From positions 1 through 64,000 of IMG/VR virus record IMGVR_UViG_3300046513_000348: a stretch of 64,000 nucleotides of DNA; one strand, 5' to 3'. Of the stretch, positions 22,424 to 58,327 are shown piece after piece (position 1 is the first letter of the stretch; every line of letters starts with the position of its first letter). The translations under genes were made by a program, and so were the position numbers. The notes under the pieces were generated by a model, which had not been told where the DNA came from, ran no database searches, and was given only the letters and a program-made list of their open reading frames with translations.

Positions 22424-23314
22424 ATGCTCGACGAGAGCCTTGACAACTTTCTGGAAACTTCGCTGACGGCGGAGCGTTACAAACTATACGTCGATGTCAT
22501 TTCCTATCTGGAAAGCATAGAATACAGCACGATCCAGGATGAACTCCTGAATCTGGCATTCTCGTCTATCAGTGACGAAGATGACAACCACGACAAACCG
22601 GACTCCCTGATCTGCGACGAAATGCATGCGCATCTCATCCAGGTTCTGGTATCCCAGCTGCGCGTCAACGGCGTGACTATCTCGGAAGAGACCACGCTGA
22701 AAGATACCTACGATCTGGCAGTGGGCATTGCTCACATCGTTGGTCATGAAGACGTGGCGAGTATTCTGGCTACGGCTGGTAACGACGAAGGTCCGATCGA
22801 TCAGTTGGCAGAAATCCTGCATCTGGTCACGACCGTCGCTACCGAACACTGGCTGACGATGATCGATGAGGTTTCTCCTCAGCTGATCAAACGCATCGTG
22901 GAGCTGGCAAACCGTACCGTCGATGCCGAGTATCAAGAGATGGAAGCCACGGCTGAATATTTACAGAAGCTGCGTATCTATTCCGAGTTCGCCCACAACG
23001 CGGGCCGTGATCTGAAGTGCTTCGATCTGGTCGAGACCAACATCCTTGGCCGGGACTTCACTTTCTACATCAACGGAGGTACGATCAACGAACTGTTCGA
23101 AGGCAACGAGATGGAGCGCCTGGCCCTCGAGCTCTACGGTATGGCATTGATGTCGGCCGATGCAAAGGACGATCCACCGGCGGCAGTTCGTGCCATCATC
23201 GAGCAGTATCTTTCCGACACGACTCGTATCGTGAAACTCAATAACGAAATCACCAAGATCAATTCGACCTTCGTGAAATTTTTTCAAACCACCACCAAGG
23301 GATTGACCTCCTAA
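22424..23314 (+). CDS. Conserved acidic protein (phiKZ gp79-like by position)
   Basis: 296 aa, AAGGAG RBS, directly upstream of the virion RNAP subunit. Confidence 0.55.
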   Translation: MLDESLDNFLETSLTAERYKLYVDVISYLESIEYSTIQDELLNLAFSSISDEDDNHDKPDSLICDEMHAHLIQVLVSQLRVNGVTISEETTLKDTYDLAVGIAHIVGHEDVASILATAGNDEGPIDQLAEILHLVTTVATEHWLTMIDEVSPQLIKRIVELANRTVDAEYQEMEATAEYLQKLRIYSEFAHNAGRDLKCFDLVETNILGRDFTFYINGGTINELFEGNEMERLALELYGMALMSADAKDDPPAAVRAIIEQYLSDTTRIVKLNNEITKINSTFVKFFQTTTKGLTS

Positions 23315-25502: not shown

Positions 25503-26438
25503 TTAACGACGCTTCTTGCGGGTAACACGCTTCGCACGTTGCCGGCGATTCTTCTCGTGTTCCAGCTGGTCCTTGCGGGCCTGTGCTGCGAAGTTGGTAC
25601 GCTCGGTTTCCTGCATGATGTCCGAGTAGGTCACGTCGATGGCATTCTGATAGAAGTCACGACGGAACTTTTCATTCGGGATCAGCTCGTTCGTACCCAG
25701 CAGGTCGAACGGCAGCATCGATGCTTCCTTCGCGCCCTTCGACAGGAATTGCGTGAAGTAGCGAACGATTGCAATCGACATACCCTCGCAACGATCGTTG
25801 TAGTGGATATGACCCTTGTGACGGTACAGGACGCCGTTCAGGCCGTTCAACTTGTAGTACTTCTCGCAGATCTTGATCAGGTCGAGTGCGATCGCCTGGA
25901 GGCCTTTGCCGCCGGAGTACTCGGTGATTGCCTGGGCCACCACATTCATCAGCATCCATTGGTAAGTCGCCACGTAGGTTTCGACACGACCCTGGATCAT
26001 GGAACGACCATTGTATTCCACGAGAGCCTTCTCGAGTTCTTGCAGGACGTTCTTGCCGAAAGTGAACACCGACCAGCGATGGACTTTGCCAGCTTGCAGA
26101 AGACGGTCAACGACAGCCAGGAAGCGGTTGAATTCTTCTTCCTGCTTGATGCGACGCCGGTTGACGGTAGTGTTGGCGTCGACTTCAGCGAATTCGACAT
26201 TGCGACGCTCGGCGCGGTTGGCGGGACCGTTCTCGGTGAACCATTGTTCGTAGGTACCGGAGTAGCCTTTCTTTTTCGCAGCTTCGTAGGAAAGCCGGAA
26301 GGATTCGTCGAAGTTCGACTTGCGGTCGATAGGGCCAGTCTTGGGGCGCGTCTTGCGCTGATTCCAGATCAGGCCGAGGATTACCAGGATTACCAGCACT
26401 GCGACGAGGAGTGCTCGGAAGTCTTGAAAGATGGTCAT
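25503..26438 (-). CDS. Membrane-anchored hypothetical protein
   Basis: N-terminal TM helix ALLVAVLVILVILGLIW followed by basic residues; basic C-terminal tail. Confidence 0.7.
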   Translation of the reverse strand: MTIFQDFRALLVAVLVILVILGLIWNQRKTRPKTGPIDRKSNFDESFRLSYEAAKKKGYSGTYEQWFTENGPANRAERRNVEFAEVDANTTVNRRRIKQEEEFNRFLAVVDRLLQAGKVHRWSVFTFGKNVLQELEKALVEYNGRSMIQGRVETYVATYQWMLMNVVAQAITEYSGGKGLQAIALDLIKICEKYYKLNGLNGVLYRHKGHIHYNDRCEGMSIAIVRYFTQFLSKGAKEASMLPFDLLGTNELIPNEKFRRDFYQNAIDVTYSDIMQETERTNFAAQARKDQLEHEKNRRQRAKRVTRKKRR

Positions 26439-26451
26439 TTCATTTTCTCAC

Positions 26452-26853
26452 TTAGGAAGGAATATAAGTCATTACGACATGTCGGATGCCACCGTCACCA
26501 TTTGTTGAGGTTACAGGTACCAATTGAAGATCTTCCGCCTTGAAGATTACCAAAGCGGTAAGACCGGCCTTATCGTTTTCGAAGGACAAGTCCGTGTAAA
26601 AGCGACCATCCTTCTCAACGATTTCCCCGATGCTAATTAAGCCATCGAGTTCTTTCTTCTCCGGGTTTTTCTGCCGGATGTATTGCTGAATCATCTCAGC
26701 AACTTTCGTTTTGCGATCAGTGCGATTGAAGAACTGGATCAACTCTCGCCATTTGTCCAGTTCGATCTCATATTCCGGAGGGAAGAACAAAGGAACGTCC
26801 CTTACCGTTTTGTGAGTGTTCTTGGTTATGTTCAAAAGTTGATCCAAGCTCAT
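26452..26853 (-). CDS. Hypothetical protein
   Basis: 133 aa, 3 nt downstream of the ACP-like gene. Confidence 0.7.
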   Translation of the reverse strand: MSLDQLLNITKNTHKTVRDVPLFFPPEYEIELDKWRELIQFFNRTDRKTKVAEMIQQYIRQKNPEKKELDGLISIGEIVEKDGRFYTDLSFENDKAGLTALVIFKAEDLQLVPVTSTNGDGGIRHVVMTYIPS

Positions 26854-26856
26854 TTC

Positions 26857-27132
26857 TTATCCCTGATTCATGAGTGCAATAAGTTTTTCGAAGAACTGCT
26901 TCCAGGTGGGGAAGTGTTCATCGGGAATGGAGATTTCGAGTTGTTCCTCGAGCTCCGTCGTAATATCCATGTAGTCCAGCGAGTCCACGGAGTCCGTCAA
27001 ATTCTTTTCGAGGAATGCGCAGAACTCTTCGCTGTTATCTACAGCAGACTTGCGCACAACCTTCGGGTCATAAGACGAGACAACCAGGACCAGGACTCGT
27101 CGCGCGCGCTGCGCATTCGTTGCCGTTGGCAT
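26857..27132 (-). CDS. Acyl carrier protein-like protein
   Basis: 91 aa, acidic; DSLDYMDITTELEEQLEISIPDE matches the ACP signature DSLDxxELxxxLEExFxIxIPDE; GAGG RBS. Confidence 0.75.
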   Translation of the reverse strand: MPTATNAQRARRVLVLVVSSYDPKVVRKSAVDNSEEFCAFLEKNLTDSVDSLDYMDITTELEEQLEISIPDEHFPTWKQFFEKLIALMNQG

Positions 27133-27237
27133 TTTGGAACCTCGTACGTTGTAAAAAGTGGGTGGGTGTCTTCACATGAAAACCATAGTAAATGAAAAAA
27201 AATTTCCCCACGGTAACAAAATGGCAGCATAAGTCCA

Positions 27238-27265
27238 CTCCAGGATACCCTGAGGTATCCTGGAG
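27238..27265 (-). terminator. Hairpin terminator or processing stem
   Basis: 12-bp perfect stem CTCCAGGATACC / GGTATCCTGGAG. Confidence 0.65.
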
Positions 27266-27275
27266 CTTCCTCTTT

Positions 27276-27590
27276 ATCTGAACTCCCGTGTCGGCCCAAT
27301 TGGCCCCGCGGTCAGCCGCATCCAGCACAAAGGCAGGCGCGAGCAGCAGGCGGAGGCAAGGCAGTCACTGACTCTCCAGTAGTGGCTGGAGAGTCGCTAG
27401 GCGATTGGCGGCCTAATCGGAGAGGCGGCCCAACCTAGAGCAACACGGCGCGGTATAGGAATCATCATCGAGGACTATCCTACCCGCAAACGTACACGGG
27501 AGTTTCGTGGGCCTTTCACCCAACCGTAACAGAGACTACCCGCCGGGTAATCGCGCTACGTTTCCGGACTTGAACCGGTCATCAGCAGAT
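27276..27590 (-). ncRNA. Candidate structured ncRNA with a hammerhead-like core
   Basis: No credible ORF; nested helices, four with G-U wobbles on the minus strand; CUGAUGA, GAAAC, 10-bp stem III, GUU and 5-bp stem I in type I hammerhead order. Confidence 0.6.
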
Positions 27591-27592
27591 TT

Positions 27593-27967
27593 CTAGCTTA
27601 TCACTACGAGTGGCAGAATACCGTATCCCCAATTCGGCGCCACAACCGCAGCGATTGCAAATGCGACCTTGCAGATCACATGGAATAACTGGTCTTCCTT
27701 GAACGTAATGAAGTTCCGGCATTTCGCATCGTCGATGAGGAAGTGCAGGAACAGTTCTACGAGACCCAACCACAGGCTTCCCGTAATGAACCAGACGCCG
27801 CCTGCATGGATGACACTGTGCCAGAAGAGAACAATGTACCAGTCAATGCCAGGGAACGGCGTATTACGATTCTTGGCTTTCGCCAGGAAGTCGTTTTGGA
27901 GGGGATAGTCGGCGAGTGCGTGCCAGAACATCAGGGCAGCAAACACCACGAAGAACGGATACATCAC
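27593..27967 (-). CDS. DUF3307-family membrane protein
   Basis: HALADYPLQ...HSVIH...LHFLIDDAK His/Asp pattern in TM helices; GAGGTGA RBS. Confidence 0.8.
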   Translation of the reverse strand: MMYPFFVVFAALMFWHALADYPLQNDFLAKAKNRNTPFPGIDWYIVLFWHSVIHAGGVWFITGSLWLGLVELFLHFLIDDAKCRNFITFKEDQLFHVICKVAFAIAAVVAPNWGYGILPLVVIS

Positions 27968-28081: not shown

Positions 28082-28155
28082 TGGAGCGGGAACCGAGAAT
28101 CGAACTCGAGTGGGAGGCTTGGAAGGACTCCGCTTTACCACTAAGCTATCCCCGC
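28082..28155 (-). tRNA. tRNA-Gly (anticodon TCC) with encoded CCA
   Basis: Cloverleaf: acceptor GCGGGGA/TTCCCGC, D arm GCTT/AAGC, anticodon loop CT-TCC-AA, T loop TTCGATT, discriminator U, CCA. Confidence 0.95.
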
Positions 28156-34083: not shown

Positions 34084-34142
34084 GTTTTTTCTCCTGAGTT
34101 AGATGCGGGGGCCGAAGCCCCCATTTTAAAAAGTTTTGCTAC

Positions 34143-45341: not shown

Positions 45342-45357
45342 GCTTCTTCCTTAAGTT

Positions 45358-46923
45358 TTAAAAGTTGTACAAAGAGAGGAATTCTTTATTCCGCTGCTGT
45401 ACGTGGATGACGTATTCCGCCAATCTGATCCGAATGTCGTACCCCACTCGGTATGTTTTATTTGCAGAGCTTCCTCGGAACTCTGCGATCTGCTCATCGG
45501 AAAGGTTCAGGAACCAGGTGTGATCGGAGAGATCGTCACTCAGCTTCTTAATTTCCTCGATTGCTTCGTTGGTTGGGTTCGCCACCTTCTTGGTCGGATG
45601 TCGACGGTAGAAGGGGTAGAGCTCATTGAGTTTATCGACGAGCGCCTTCGGGATGTGAGCACGAGACTCATTACCGTAAGCACCATACCCTTCGGCATTC
45701 ATGCTGCGTGCAGTTGGAATGCCCGCCAGATCCTTGAAGCCCGTGTTCCAGAGCACGAATTGTGCAATACCGGCCAGGCGCAAGTTACTAGCTTTGTTGA
45801 TGTCCCACAACGCCCTTGCGGAGATGATGGGGCTGACGACCCAGCGGATCAGTTGGATTTGACATTCTTCCACGACATGGGGGCTCAGTTGGTCTGCGCT
45901 TTCCAATGCCCGGTCGAGATCGGCCATTTCCTGTTCCGTCAGTTCGTTCTTCAGCAACAGACGTGCCGCGATCTGGTAGACGTACTCGGTGTACTTCTCC
46001 ACGACCGTGAAGTCGCCAGGTGGAACCAGCGGCTTGTTCTTGTACTTCTCAGCACGAGAAGACGAGTCCTCGGACGAATCGTCCTCACCCGGATTGAGCT
46101 TTTCGAGGATCGCATTCTGATGGCTTTCATTCTGCGACAGCCGATTGCGAAGCGTCTTGTGCACAACCTGTACCAGGTGCGTATCCGTCGGCTCACGCGT
46201 CAGGCTTGCAACCACCAGGAACCGAACCAGGATGTTGGCGATCAGGTTCGTCAAGAACGTTTCCGAACCGATGCCGTTGATGGACGAACGAATGTCGATG
46301 TCGTTCTGCTTGACGTTCTTTGCCACATAGTGGTTCAGACGTTCCATCGCCGGACTCGAAATGAACTTCGTCTTCGAGATCAGGTAGTAAGCATTCAGGT
46401 CACGGAAGGTTGCTCCCGATTCCTTCTTGGTGGCTTCCACGAACTCGCCCCAGATTGGAGAGATGACGCGAAGCTTGATCACCATGAACACCAGTTCCCA
46501 ATAGTCCGAGACCAGATAGGTCTGCTCACGGCTACCAGGCTTTTCGTGCGAATACTTGTACTCGACATCGAGTTCTTCCGGGATCCAGATACCGCCGTGG
46601 AAACGCGTCCAGCGTTCGAAGTCTTCGGTGTCGTGCATATCCAACAGCTCTTCGACAACAGGACGAAGCTGAAGGATCAGGGAATTCACCTGGAAGGTAC
46701 CGTTGAAGATTTCCTTGGCTTCACGATACAACTCGAAGACGCGATCCTGCATCTCCGGATCTTGACGATTCCAGAATTTATTCAGCTGGGTGAAAGGTTC
46801 GTACGATCCTTTCTTAAAGGCCTGTTGGTAGGCTGACCCATTGAACTCGAGCGTTTCACCGCGGTGCTCGACGTGGATCATGCTCAGACCACCACCGCCT
46901 GCATGGAGAAACTTTACTTGCAT
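45358..46923 (-). CDS. Non-virion RNAP promoter-specificity (sigma-like) subunit (phiKZ gp68-like)
   Basis: 521 aa from ATG 46923 (AAGGAG RBS); size and synteny. Confidence 0.7.
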   Translation of the reverse strand: MQVKFLHAGGGGLSMIHVEHRGETLEFNGSAYQQAFKKGSYEPFTQLNKFWNRQDPEMQDRVFELYREAKEIFNGTFQVNSLILQLRPVVEELLDMHDTEDFERWTRFHGGIWIPEELDVEYKYSHEKPGSREQTYLVSDYWELVFMVIKLRVISPIWGEFVEATKKESGATFRDLNAYYLISKTKFISSPAMERLNHYVAKNVKQNDIDIRSSINGIGSETFLTNLIANILVRFLVVASLTREPTDTHLVQVVHKTLRNRLSQNESHQNAILEKLNPGEDDSSEDSSSRAEKYKNKPLVPPGDFTVVEKYTEYVYQIAARLLLKNELTEQEMADLDRALESADQLSPHVVEECQIQLIRWVVSPIISARALWDINKASNLRLAGIAQFVLWNTGFKDLAGIPTARSMNAEGYGAYGNESRAHIPKALVDKLNELYPFYRRHPTKKVANPTNEAIEEIKKLSDDLSDHTWFLNLSDEQIAEFRGSSANKTYRVGYDIRIRLAEYVIHVQQRNKEFLSLYNF

Positions 46924-53948: not shown

Positions 53949-54135
53949 TACGCCTCCTAGTACAATTGTAAAAGCCTCTTAACTGCAGGTCATACCAATG
54001 ATATATGTCTATTCGTTTTTATATATGAATATATCAGGTAATTATTTATACAAAAAAATAAGGCAAGAAAAAAACCCTTACTGGCGTTCTTTCTTTATCC
54101 CTCATCAAGACTTCTGATAGGGATTCTCGCGGGGC

Positions 54136-54933: not shown

Positions 54934-54984
54934 TCCTTTGTAAAAGTTACCAGGTGTCGAACGACACCTGGTGATTATAGGTTA

Positions 54985-56253: not shown

Positions 56254-56292
56254 TAAGTCTCCAACATTGTAAAATATAAAGCATAAGGAACA

Positions 56293-56359: not shown

Positions 56360-58327
56360 TTACCAGCGGCCGCCGAAACGCTCGTCCGAGCGGTCCGAGT
56401 AGCGATCGTCGTAACGGTCGCGACCTTGACGCTGGTTGCGGTACAGGCCGCCCGAACCAGGACGGTTCAGGATCTGGTCGATGTTGCCGTAGGTGGTACG
56501 GAAACGATCGTTGCCATCGCGGCTCGACGAGGTCGGGTTGAGCGACAGCTTGCAGCGGGTGATGGCTTCCAGCAGGGCCTCGTTGAAGCCGAGGGTGAAG
56601 TTGAAGCGCTGGTGGTAGCCGGTGATCACCGAGGTCGGCACGAAGTCCTTGATGATTTCGTAGCGTTCCGATTGGGTCAGGACGTTGTCTTCGTTCGAAG
56701 TCGCAGCCATGCCCCAACGCTGGATGATCTCCAGGTCTTCTTCCTTTTCCGGGCGCAGGAAGTTCAGCAGCGCCAGGTAGTCGAAGTCACGCAGGTCCAG
56801 ACGCTGGCCGCCCGATGCCTCGGTGTAGTAGCCGGCGTGGATACGCTCGATGTGCGGATCGATGATGGCTTCCGAACGATCGTACAGGTCTTCAAAGTGG
56901 CCATTGGTCAGCACGCAGGCCGCATCGTAGATACGACGCATTGCGCTTTCATTGCCCTGCGCAGCTGCCAGCAGGTCGATGTGCTGCCAGGTGCTGGCGC
57001 CGCATTCCGGAACGTCGATCGAGAAGATGATGCCCGGACGGACGGTTGCACGCAGCAGTGCTTGACGCTTGGCCGTGGTGAACGACGAGGTTTTGGTTTC
57101 CCAGCGTTCGCCGAAGCCACGTTCCATGTCCTGCAGGTTCGGCTCGATTGCCAACGCACCGATGTTGCGCGGATCGTCTTCACCCAGGGACTGGTTCGGC
57201 TCGAAGGCACGCATCACTTCCTGCGACTCGCCCATGGCGTTCATGGTCGCCATCGCCAGCAGCATGGTCGTCGGCGAGAAGTCGACGGTGTCCACGAAGG
57301 TGGTGATGAAGCGCAGCGCGTACAGCTGATACTCTTCGCCCGAGATGCGGCGATCGCGGCGGCTGTACAGGTCGTTGCGGTTGTTGGCGCCTTCGGCCGG
57401 CGCGTAGACGAAGTCGAAGTAGCCACCCAGGCGCGAGATGCGGGTGCCGGTCACCAGCTGGTCGATCGAGTCGCGGCTGTTGCGGCCCTTGGCTTCGCGG
57501 GACTGCAGATCCACGATCACGTCGGCACGGGTCGGCATGTGGCCGCGGTCGAAGATGTGGTTCTGGCGATGCTGGACGTGCACGCTGTTGTAGGTGTCGA
57601 CGTTGTCGTCGGCGCTCAGCACCAGTGCGATCGCGTCCGGATCGTTGCGGTCGATGAAGGTCTTGATCGCGGCGAATGCGTTCTTGACGCAGTCGGCGAT
57701 TGCCTGCGGGTCTTCCTTGGCGGTCGGGAAACCTTCCGAGATGACTTCAGCGTCGGCCGAGAACAGGTTCTTGTTGCCGTAGTGGCGTTCCAGAACGTCC
57801 TTGATGACCTGACGGGTCTTGTTGTTGTAACCATCGCCCGGGACCTGGACGATGAACACGCGCTGGCCGCGATAGCTTTCTTCACGCGGACGCAGGGTCT
57901 CGGCCGAACCGGCGAGCAGGAAGGTGTGGTAGCCCACGCCCAGGTGCTCTTTGCCGCGGCGGGTGCCGGCGACGACCAGCAGCGAGAACGGGATACCGGC
58001 CGACGAGGCGTCGATCGGGAACACGCTCACGTTCAGCATGTTGTTGTCGTCTTTTGCCGGCATTGCTTCGACGAAGTCGCGGCGGAACGATTCCAGCGCT
58101 TCGGCGGTGTTGCTCATCGCCAGCGGCGTCGGGTTGGCACGGCCGATGCTCGACAGGGATGCGAAGCGGGACGGTGCATTGGTTTCGCTGCGACGCGATT
58201 CTTCACGGCGGCTGCCGCGATCTTCTTGTTGACCGCCACGATCGGTGTTGCCACCGGATTGACGCTCTTGCGCTTCTTTCATTGCCGAGCGAACTTGGGA
58301 TTGACGGTCTTGACCTTCGATTGCCAT
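56360..58327 (-). CDS. chmA: Chimallin, major phage nuclear shell protein (phiKZ gp54-like)
   Basis: 655 aa with disordered termini; very strong codon bias; early promoter; position between the gp52-like gene and beta'-N. Confidence 0.85.
   Translation of the reverse strand: MAIEGQDRQSQVRSAMKEAQERQSGGNTDRGGQQEDRGSRREESRRSETNAPSRFASLSSIGRANPTPLAMSNTAEALESFRRDFVEAMPAKDDNNMLNVSVFPIDASSAGIPFSLLVVAGTRRGKEHLGVGYHTFLLAGSAETLRPREESYRGQRVFIVQVPGDGYNNKTRQVIKDVLERHYGNKNLFSADAEVISEGFPTAKEDPQAIADCVKNAFAAIKTFIDRNDPDAIALVLSADDNVDTYNSVHVQHRQNHIFDRGHMPTRADVIVDLQSREAKGRNSRDSIDQLVTGTRISRLGGYFDFVYAPAEGANNRNDLYSRRDRRISGEEYQLYALRFITTFVDTVDFSPTTMLLAMATMNAMGESQEVMRAFEPNQSLGEDDPRNIGALAIEPNLQDMERGFGERWETKTSSFTTAKRQALLRATVRPGIIFSIDVPECGASTWQHIDLLAAAQGNESAMRRIYDAACVLTNGHFEDLYDRSEAIIDPHIERIHAGYYTEASGGQRLDLRDFDYLALLNFLRPEKEEDLEIIQRWGMAATSNEDNVLTQSERYEIIKDFVPTSVITGYHQRFNFTLGFNEALLEAITRCKLSLNPTSSSRDGNDRFRTTYGNIDQILNRPGSGGLYRNQRQGRDRYDDRYSDRSDERFGGRW

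What the first reader, a model, noticed from the sequence alone, without database searches (positions are those of the whole stretch)
26857..27132. Phage-encoded acyl carrier protein with an intact phosphopantetheine site
Seen: 91 aa, acidic, DSLD serine and helix II/III pattern LEEQLEISIPDE. No PPTase or fatty-acid synthesis gene lies in the window. Known: host ACP feeds lipid, lipid A and lipoate synthesis and binds SpoT and MukB. Inference: it is either a real carrier diverting acyl chains to phage-built membranes (nucleus-forming phages make an early lipid vesicle), or a decoy that rewires SpoT/MukB or ACP-dependent defence proteins.
Basis: partly seen in the sequence, partly recalled or inferred. 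Interest (0 to 1): 0.7.

Follow-up and report, generated by a model that had tools for sequence, protein, structure and literature searches.

The report
Phage ACP-fold protein, serine dispensable
A nucleus-forming jumbo phage from soil carries a real, well-conserved small protein with the acyl carrier protein fold. The serine that would hold the carrier's prosthetic arm is replaced in about 40% of its orthologues, so the family probably works as a protein-binding subunit and not as a lipid carrier.

Summary
The ORF is real: window 26857-27132 (-), 91 aa, pI 4.5, with a DSLD motif (Ser51). AlphaFold2 gives a confident model (pLDDT 90.9). Its best structural matches are almost all carrier proteins (Z up to 9.8), and a family profile hits only carrier proteins in the PDB (best E 4.6e-4). 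The phage is a chimallivirus near Chiangmaivirus (RSL2, RSF1, SURPRISE13). Its 218.7-kb genome has no PPTase and none of nine ACP-using enzyme families tested.

The "intact site" is not a family feature. Among 23 distinct orthologues, 14 have Ser and 9 have A, P, F, L, Q or V, including the cultured phage RSF1. A tree needs at least 5 state changes. The Ser column ranks 66th of 91 in conservation, while the flanking helix II residues D50, D53, E60 and E62 are invariant or nearly so. Ser-less copies keep the same synteny and dN/dS of 0.14-0.30.

The gene is the first of a clade-specific three-gene operon. It is followed after 1-3 nt by a 133-aa protein, then by a basic protein with an N-terminal hydrophobic helix. 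The most likely role is a phosphopantetheine-independent acidic binding subunit. Its partner is not identified. A relative is already annotated "ACP-like".

The parts
26857..27132 (-). ACP-fold gene, 91 aa, pI 4.5; member of PHROG 31629
   Evidence: AF2 pLDDT 90.9. Carrier-protein fold matches. Family profile against PDB.
26980..26982 (-). Codon TCG for Ser51, the would-be phosphopantetheine attachment serine of the DSLD motif
   Evidence: The column is S14 A4 P1 F1 L1 Q1 V1 in 23 orthologues.
26938..26982 (-). Helix II (residues 51-65), an acidic face. Together with D50 just before the helix, D53, D56, I57, E60 and E62 are invariant or nearly so.
   Evidence: DSSP on the model; column statistics.
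27140..27143 (-). GAGG Shine-Dalgarno-like element with a 7-nt spacer to the ATG
   Evidence: Read from the sequence.
27149..27156 (-). TTTTACAA motif 17 nt upstream of the ATG. The same or a near-identical motif lies 0-94 nt (mostly under 50) upstream of about 24 genes in this genome. It is a candidate phage promoter or translation signal of unknown temporal class.
   Evidence: 18 of its 27 genome-wide copies lie in the ~10% non-coding DNA.
26452..26853 (-). Second operon gene, 133 aa (PHROG 35468). It starts 3 nt after the ACP-fold gene's stop and has the same phyletic range.
   Evidence: Spacing is 1-3 nt in all orthologous loci seen. AF2 pLDDT 84.7.
25503..26438 (-). Third operon gene, 311 aa, pI 9.8 (PHROG 36615). 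It has an N-terminal hydrophobic helix, a conserved YRHxxHxHYxxRCE motif and a very basic C-terminal tail.
27238..27265 (.). 12-bp perfect hairpin (CTCCAGGATACC...GGTATCCTGGAG) about 105 nt upstream of the gene. Related hairpins recur in the genome.
27380..27592 (-). Conserved, structured non-coding element upstream of the operon. It may be a leader or a separate ncRNA.
   Evidence: No Rfam match.

Best explanation
The gene encodes a highly diverged acyl carrier protein homologue that has been turned into a protein-binding module and does not need phosphopantetheine for its conserved job. What selection keeps is the fold's hydrophobic core, the acidic face of helix II (D50, D53, D56, E60, E62), two helix I residues (Q8, R11) and T76-W77 at the start of the last helix. 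The attachment serine is not kept. The protein is made from the first cistron of a three-gene operon found only in Chiangmaivirus-like chimalliviruses. I infer that it docks through its acidic helix II onto a basic surface of a phage-encoded partner. The most likely partner is one or both co-translated neighbours: the 133-aa alpha/beta protein and the basic protein with an N-terminal hydrophobic anchor. That would make it a small acidic accessory subunit of a membrane-associated phage complex. Shown here: the fold, the homology, the serine's dispensability, purifying selection, operon conservation, and the absence of phage-encoded ACP enzymes. Inferred: Ppant-independent binding, the identity of the partner, and the membrane location. 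In copies that keep DSLD, such as this one, host AcpS may still add the arm, but that would be incidental or lineage-specific.
For: Fold and homology. AF2 pLDDT is 90.9. Nearly all of the Foldseek PDB top 50 are carrier proteins. VIA-align gives Z 8-9.8 over 73-80 residues at rmsd about 2.2 A. All named ESM Atlas neighbours are PF00550. The family profile hits 112 PDB chains, and the top 60 are all carrier proteins, best E 4.6e-4.

Serine dispensable. The census is 14 Ser and 9 non-Ser among 23 orthologues, with six different replacement residues. RSL2 has TCG and its close relative RSF1 has GCG. The tree needs at least 5 changes. The Ser column ranks 66th of 91 in conservation, while D50 and E62 are invariant. 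dN/dS is 0.14-0.30 in pairs that include Ser-less genes. Ser-less orthologues sit in the same gene order.

No carrier pathway. There is no PPTase and no KS, AT, adenylating enzyme, PlsC, MBOAT, Acyl_transf_3, LuxI or Hexapep family in the 97%-complete genome.

Operon. All three genes occur in exactly the same 11 phage records. The gap to the next start codon is 1-3 nt in every locus. Charges are complementary, pI 4.5 against 9.8. The third protein has an N-terminal hydrophobic segment in every orthologue aligned.

Precedent. Among the best structural matches are ACPs that serve as accessory subunits of membrane complexes: MmpL5-MmpS5-AcpM, EmbC-AcpM, Ycf2/Orf2971-FtsHi and complex I.
Against: No direct evidence for any partner. 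The only complex prediction I could run (ACP-fold plus the 133-aa protein) scored 0.04 and the tool's verdict was 'no answer'. The third protein could not be tested. The serine is still the commonest residue (61% of sequences; 3 of the 9 cluster representatives at 50% identity), and the DSLD motif is canonical in this copy, so a carrier role in some lineages is not excluded. In the precedents named, the ACP is usually holo and its acyl-Ppant arm contributes to binding. No expression, localisation or virion data exist for any family member.
Confidence: 0.45

Rival explanations
1. Host-ACP decoy. The protein imitates the recognition helix of host AcpP and occupies or sequesters a host ACP client without needing the prosthetic group. 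Candidate clients are fatty-acid or lipid A enzymes, PlsX, IscS, SpoT, MukB, or an ACP-dependent defence or toxin protein. This would rewire host metabolism or signalling.
For: The region DSLD...LEE...IPDE is about 50% identical to bacterial AcpP, while the rest is below 20% (alignments). The acidic helix II residues equivalent to E. coli D35, D38, E41 and E47 are invariant or nearly so even in Ser-less members. Helix II is the shared docking site for FAS enzymes, SpoT and MukB (PMC3340395).
Against: The central hydrophobic helix II triplet L42-V43-M44, whose mutation abolishes SpoT, MukB, FabZ/A and PlsX binding in E. coli (PMC3340395), is I-T-T here. Positions 58 and 59 are among the most variable in the family. 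The family-specific invariants Q8, R11 and W77 have no counterpart in AcpP. Strict co-inheritance and translational coupling with two phage genes point to a phage partner. There are no PADLOC hits.
Confidence: 0.2
2. Genuine carrier protein. Host AcpS or PcpS loads Ser51, and the holo protein carries acyl or other groups for a phage purpose such as membrane or vesicle lipid supply.
For: The DSLD motif is canonical in this copy and in 14 of 23 orthologues. The ACP fold is confirmed. The third operon gene has an N-terminal hydrophobic anchor. Other phages encode ACPs (PMC7760394). Chimalliviruses are reported to use an early lipid vesicle; this is my background knowledge and was not tested here.
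Against: Ser is replaced by non-modifiable residues in 9 of 23 orthologues, including the viable phage RSF1, with at least 5 independent changes and continued purifying selection. No PPTase and no acyl-ACP-using or ACP-loading enzyme family is found in the genome. The Pfam PP-binding score is below the gathering cut-off and covers helix II only. The family is confined to one small clade and is not found in chimalliviruses generally.
Confidence: 0.12
3. Chance ORF or decaying remnant with no function.
For: It is a short ORF, and a longer ORF (170 aa, 26683-27195) overlaps it on the opposite strand.
Against: There are 23 distinct full-length orthologues of 91-93 aa with no disruptions. dN/dS is 0.08-0.30. 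The model is confident and well packed. The codon model prefers this frame. Operon position is conserved.
Confidence: 0.02

Closest known systems
Bacterial type II acyl carrier protein (AcpP; Pfam PF00550 PP-binding)
   Same: Same four-helix fold: Z 8-9.8, rmsd about 2.2 A over nearly the whole domain. Same small size, acidic pI and acidic helix II. This copy has DSLD at the helix II N-terminus and an IPDE loop.
   Different: The attachment serine is not conserved across the family. The Pfam score is below the gathering cut-off. An insertion with extra short helices lies between helix I and helix II. The central helix II residues are polar or variable, not L-V-M. There is a family-specific invariant Trp77. 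The genome has no cognate enzymes.
Other phage-encoded ACPs (PHROG 5934; for example Salmonella phage ViI, Caulobacter phiCbK, Achromobacter Motura, Erwinia Eneladusvirus)
   Same: A small phage-borne ACP-fold protein of unknown role. They are the next-best viral structural matches after the RSF1 orthologue.
   Different: It belongs to a separate sequence family: PHROG 31629 at 1.8e-27 full length, against PHROG 5934 at 4.5e-4 over 30 residues. Identity is about 19%. The family is restricted to Chiangmaivirus-like phages.
SURPRISE13_207 (XBS47741.1), RSL2 ORF196 and RSF1 ORF203 in Chiangmaivirus phages
   Same: True orthologues: 52-62% identity, same length, same operon and same flanking RNAP gene block. 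The SURPRISE13 copy is already annotated 'acyl carrier protein-like superfamily protein'.
   Different: The window phage is a more distant, uncultured soil or rhizosphere relative. RSF1 has Ala in place of the serine.
ACPs used as accessory subunits of large complexes (AcpM with MmpL5-MmpS5 or EmbC; ACP in Ycf2/Orf2971-FtsHi; NDUFAB1 in complex I)
   Same: An ACP fold acting as a stably bound small acidic subunit, often on membrane-embedded assemblies. These are among the top structural matches.
   Different: Those are ordinary holo-ACPs borrowed from lipid metabolism, and the acyl-Ppant arm often takes part in binding. Here the arm cannot be required. No complex has been shown.

Membership tests
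Acyl carrier protein / PP-binding carrier domain (PF00550) | Four-helix-bundle carrier fold | tested here: met
   AF2 pLDDT 90.9. Nearly all of the Foldseek PDB top 50 are carrier proteins. VIA-align Z up to 9.8. ESM Atlas neighbours are all PF00550.
Acyl carrier protein / PP-binding carrier domain (PF00550) | Sequence match at or above Pfam's curated gathering score | tested here: not met
   19.3 bits against a cut-off of 20.8, covering residues 49-74 only. NCBIfam ACP models score 15-22 bits against cut-offs of 66-146. Homology is still supported at profile level: best PDB E 4.6e-4, and 13 of 18 members hit PF00550 at E<=1.
Acyl carrier protein / PP-binding carrier domain (PF00550) | Serine at the N-terminus of helix II in a D-S-L context, present in this copy | tested here: met
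   D50-S51-L52-D53. The model's helix II starts at residue 51.
Acyl carrier protein / PP-binding carrier domain (PF00550) | That serine is conserved across orthologues, as expected if the prosthetic group is needed | tested here: not met
   14 Ser and 9 non-Ser (A4, P, F, L, Q, V) in 23 sequences. At least 5 changes on the tree. The column ranks 66th of 91 in conservation.
Acyl carrier protein / PP-binding carrier domain (PF00550) | The protein is actually 4'-phosphopantetheinylated | not testable with these tools
   Needs intact-mass MS or in vitro loading with AcpS or Sfp.
Acyl carrier protein / PP-binding carrier domain (PF00550) | Genomic association with a PPTase or with enzymes that load or use the carrier | tested here: not met
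   No match to ACPS, ketoacyl-synt, Acyl_transf_1, AMP-binding, Acyltransferase, MBOAT, Acyl_transf_3, Autoind_synth or Hexapep in the whole phage genome. Host enzymes could substitute.
Phage ACP family PHROG 5934 | Full-length match to the family profile | tested here: not met
   E 4.5e-4 over residues 48-77 only. The protein's own family is PHROG 31629, at 1.8e-27 over residues 5-90.
PHROG 31629 / Chiangmaivirus ORF196-type ACP-like proteins | Full-length similarity plus conserved position as the first gene of the three-gene operon convergent with the RNAP beta-prime gene block | tested here: met
Host-ACP mimic (decoy) acting on canonical AcpP clients | Retention of the helix II contact residues that clients use: acidic residues plus the central L-V-M | tested here: inconclusive
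   The acidic residues are conserved, but the central positions 58 and 59 are T-T here and variable in the family. Requirement taken from PMC3340395.

The most novel reading that the evidence does not exclude
Chiangmaivirus-like nucleus-forming phages have turned an ACP into a phosphopantetheine-independent subunit of a membrane-anchored phage complex. The other parts would be the 133-aa protein and the basic, His/Cys-motif protein with an N-terminal transmembrane helix. The complex might act at the cell or early-vesicle membrane. This would be a viral case of the ACP fold working purely as a docking module.
Probability: 0.2. Interest if true: 0.65.

Novelty: new variant of a known kind. Interest (0 to 1): 0.4.

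Why it matters
Phage ACPs are usually annotated as auxiliary lipid-metabolism genes. This family shows that the label can mislead. The fold and the recognition helix are under strong selection, while the residue that defines a carrier drifts freely. That points to an ACP fold reused as a protein-binding part in nucleus-forming phages. The question is directly testable, because cultured relatives supply a natural Ser/Ala pair (RSL2 or SURPRISE13 against RSF1). It also flags a compact, uncharacterised three-gene module, one member of which has a membrane anchor. The module is specific to phages of the plant pathogens Ralstonia and Burkholderia that are being explored for biocontrol.

Tried and rejected
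- **Nucleotide and collection searches.** Megablast of the locus against phage records found nothing. The IMG/VR scan with the family alignment returned only RSL2 and RSF1.
- **Complex prediction.** ACP-fold plus the 133-aa neighbour scored 0.04, verdict 'no answer', so it is not used as evidence either way. I rebuilt the alignments without them.
- **Anti-CRISPR lead.** A single-sequence PDB hit to an anti-CRISPR protein (9vx9, E 0.18) disappeared when the family profile was used. Rejected.
- **Second PP-binding hit.** The weak hit at 22964-23071(-) is antisense to a strongly supported gene (22424-23314, PHROG 35954 at 1.7e-119). Rejected as spurious.
- **Neighbour function.** There were no PADLOC matches. 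ESM Atlas feature searches gave only noise-level leads, scores 0.65-0.67. Foldseek against PDB for the 133-aa model gave no fold match.
- **Expression evidence.** Runs labelled metatranscriptomic hold 3.6-7.9-kb contigs of uniform depth that span both strands and are flagged 'probably DNA'. They give no evidence of transcription.
- **Promoter class.** There is no sigma-70-like promoter in the region. The TTTTACAA motif could not be assigned to early, middle or late genes.
- **Literature.** I found no proteomic or transcriptomic data for any orthologue.

Full report
**1. Observation.**
The window holds an ATG-started ORF of 91 aa at 26857-27132 on the minus strand. The product has pI 4.5. A basic N-terminal third (6 K/R, 1 D/E in residues 1-30) is followed by a very acidic remainder (15 D/E, 3 K/R). 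It contains D50-S51-L52-D53 and LEEQLEISIPDE as described. GAGG lies upstream of the ATG with a 7-nt spacer. A codon-usage model trained on securely identified genes of the same genome selects this ORF over the overlapping plus-strand ORF.

**2. The phage.**
The window is the first 64 kb of a 218,660-bp IMG/VR virus record estimated 97% complete.
- It encodes split phiKZ-type RNA polymerase beta/beta-prime subunits.
- At 56360-58327 it encodes a protein 74% identical to the putative nuclear-shell protein gp235 of Burkholderia phage SURPRISE13.
- SURPRISE13, RSL2, RSF1, FLC6 and FLC8 form the genus Chiangmaivirus, placed in Chimalliviridae (PMC11898562).
- Megablast finds no near-identical phage. 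Protein identities to Chiangmaivirus are 35-74%, so this is a more distant, uncultured relative.
- Near-identical DNA occurs in rhizosphere and soil metagenomes.

**3. It is an ACP homologue.**
Single-sequence evidence is weak.
- Pfam PP-binding scores 19.3 bits against a cut-off of 20.8, over residues 49-74 only.
- NCBIfam ACP models score far below their cut-offs.
- phmmer against PDB gives E about 0.1.

The protein's own family is PHROG 31629 (unknown function, 1.8e-27). The phage 'ACP' family PHROG 5934 matches only at 4.5e-4 over 30 residues.

Family-level and structural evidence is clear.
- A profile of 18 orthologues hits 112 PDB chains at E<=1. The top 60 are all carrier proteins, best E 4.6e-4.
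- 13 of 18 members hit PF00550 individually.
- AlphaFold2 on the family alignment gives pLDDT 90.9 and pTM 0.81.
- Nearly all of the Foldseek PDB top 50 are ACP, DltC or PCP chains.
- VIA-align gives Z 8-9.8 at rmsd about 2.2 A over 73-80 residues.
- ESM Atlas neighbours are all PF00550 clusters.
- In BFVD the best hit is the RSF1 orthologue, followed by annotated phage ACPs.

Compared with AcpP, the loop between helix I and helix II carries extra short helices (28-31, 34-41, 45-48). Helix III is reduced to a loop.

**4. The family is small and clade-specific.**
An exhaustive phmmer scan of 1.84 billion cluster representatives found 9 proteins at E<=1e-3. Eight are 91-93-aa orthologues and one is a tandem bacterial ACP at 1.6e-4. 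A profile search of 5.8 billion proteins found 16 clusters. tblastn against 50,697 phage records found exactly 11 records, all Chiangmaivirus-type Ralstonia or Burkholderia phages. Two sources already label close metagenomic copies 'acyl carrier protein'. SURPRISE13_207 is annotated 'acyl carrier protein-like superfamily protein'.

**5. The key result: the serine is not conserved.**
In 23 distinct orthologues the column aligned with Ser51 is S14, A4, P1, F1, L1, Q1, V1. The neighbouring D50 is invariant. D53, I57 and E60 are at least 96% conserved, D56 is D/E only, and E62 is invariant.
- By entropy the Ser column ranks 66th of 91.
- RSL2 and RsoM3USA have TCG (Ser). Their close relative RSF1, a cultured plaque-forming phage, has GCG (Ala). 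P0007 has CCG (Pro).
- A maximum-likelihood tree needs at least 5 Ser/non-Ser changes (5-7 in bootstrap trees). Well-supported branches alone force at least 2.
- No alternative serine is consistently available near the helix II N-terminus.
- The Ser-less genes are not decaying. Pairwise dN/dS involving RSF1, P0007 or P0008 is 0.14-0.30 where dS is measurable.
- They sit in the same gene order. One case is a 119-kb contig with the full neighbourhood and Phe in place of Ser.

For a protein whose job is to carry a thioester on phosphopantetheine, this residue is indispensable. That is established knowledge of the family; in E. coli, ACP S36T is non-functional (PMC3340395). The conserved function of this phage family therefore cannot depend on the prosthetic group.

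**6. No carrier pathway in the phage.**
The whole genome has no match, even at E<=1, to ACPS (AcpS/Sfp PPTases), ketoacyl-synt, Acyl_transf_1, AMP-binding, PlsC-type Acyltransferase, MBOAT, Acyl_transf_3, Autoind_synth or Hexapep. The same searches found eight of the nine families in control genomes; Autoind_synth reached its cut-off in none, so that negative has no control. The only other weak PP-binding hit is antisense to a real gene.

**7. Context.**
The gene is the first of three co-oriented genes.
- The 133-aa gene (26452-26853) starts 3 nt after its stop. The gap is 1-3 nt in every orthologous locus examined.
- The 311-aa gene (25503-26438) follows after 13 nt.
- All three occur in exactly the same 11 phage records. 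They are always convergent with a block that contains an RNAP beta-prime-like gene.
- The 133-aa protein models well (pLDDT 84.7) but has no PDB fold match. It has only a weak, possibly meaningful resemblance to prohead-protease-fold proteins in AFDB.
- The third protein is basic (pI 9.8). In every orthologue aligned it has an N-terminal hydrophobic segment followed by Lys/Arg, a conserved Y-R-H-x-x-H-x-H-Y-x-x-R-C-E motif, and a very basic C-terminal tail.
- Upstream of the ACP-fold gene lies a 460-nt non-coding stretch. A TTTTACAA motif sits 17 nt before the ATG and recurs just upstream of about 24 genes.

**8. Mechanism.**
The pattern of constraint is a conserved core, a conserved acidic helix II face, conserved Q8, R11 and T76-W77, and a free attachment site. 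That is what is expected of an ACP fold kept as a docking module.

Helix II is the surface by which ACP binds basic patches on its partners (PMC3340395). Two readings remain: a phage-encoded partner, or host ACP clients (a decoy). I favour a phage partner for three reasons.
- The gene is strictly co-inherited and translationally coupled with two phage genes.
- Its charge is complementary to the third protein.
- The central helix II residues that E. coli ACP needs for SpoT, MukB, FabZ/A and PlsX (L42-V43-M44) are I-T-T here, and the last two are among the most variable positions of the family.

ACPs serving as accessory subunits of membrane complexes are among the best structural matches. These include AcpM with MmpL5 or EmbC, and ACP in the Ycf2-FtsHi motor. 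They show that the fold is used this way, although there the arm is usually present.

The one complex prediction I could run (with the 133-aa protein) returned 'no answer' and is not evidence either way. Partner identity and location are inferences.

**9. Verdict.**
- The decoy or binder alternative is closer. The named targets are doubtful and a phage partner is more likely.
- The protein is an ACP-fold family member but fails the family-level defining feature of a carrier. It should be called 'ACP-like', not 'acyl carrier protein'.
- Relatives are already annotated as ACP-like. What is new is the evidence that the attachment serine is dispensable, and the definition of the three-gene module.
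- I rate this a new variant of a known kind, of moderate interest.

Noticed in passing
window 27133-27592 (minus-strand sense), especially 27380-27592: A 460-nt GC-rich non-coding stretch lies between the DUF3307 gene and the ACP-like gene. It folds far better than shuffles (z -3.98). Its 5' ~200 nt aligns with the equivalent intergenic DNA of SURPRISE13, RSL2, RSF1 and RsoM3USA, although the flanking small genes differ. Two hairpins, one with the core GGGTGAAAGGCCC, show compensatory changes. There is no Rfam match. It is a candidate phage ncRNA or operon leader.
   Followed up: partly
window 28082-28155 (-): tRNA-Gly(UCC), 54 bits against Rfam tRNA. In a ~96%-identical strain contig from another rhizosphere run the 74-nt gene is precisely absent. 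In a ~89%-identical lineage it is replaced by other sequence. The tRNA is therefore an indel polymorphism among close strains.
   Followed up: partly
window 26452-26853 (-): The 133-aa operon partner has a confident AF2 model (pLDDT 84.7). Its AFDB matches include DUF2213, HK97 and 'capsid maturation protease' entries (probability up to 1.0, TM 0.37-0.56), and T4 gp21 appears low in the PDB list. No conserved His/Ser pair is evident, so it may be a catalytically dead protease-fold protein.
   Followed up: partly
window 25503-26438 (-): The third operon gene encodes a basic (pI 9.8) protein. It has an N-terminal hydrophobic helix, a conserved YRHxxHxHYxxRCE motif that looks like a metal or active site, and a conserved Arg/Lys-rich C-terminal tail. 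It has no significant Pfam or PADLOC match. The window copy has a ~38-residue insertion after the helix relative to Chiangmaivirus.
   Followed up: partly
genome-wide; in the window for example 27149-27156, 34124-34131, 45356-45363, 53966-53973, 54938-54945, 56267-56274 (all minus strand): TTTTACAA or TTTTAAAA lies 0-94 nt (mostly under 50) upstream of about 24 start codons. 18 of the 27 TTTTACAA copies fall in the ~10% of the genome that is non-coding. It is a likely phage promoter or translation-initiation signal of unknown temporal class.
   Followed up: partly
window 27238-27265: A perfect 12-bp hairpin, CTCCAGGATACC-loop-GGTATCCTGGAG. Its 9-mers recur 6-7 times in the genome, and a similar GGGATACC...GGTATCCC hairpin precedes a gene near genome position 195,440. 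It may be a terminator or a regulatory stem-loop family.
   Followed up: no
window 27593-27967 (-): A DUF3307 (PF11750) membrane protein (PHROG 2470) is conserved at this position in all relatives. Its function is unknown.
   Followed up: no
L004 and L005 (RSL2 ORF196/ORF195; RSF1 ORF203/ORF202): The GenBank start codons of the RSL2 and RSF1 orthologues of both the ACP-like gene (80 aa annotated against 91 aa) and the 133-aa gene (85 aa annotated against 134 aa) appear to be called too far downstream. The extended frames align full-length with all other family members.
   Followed up: partly
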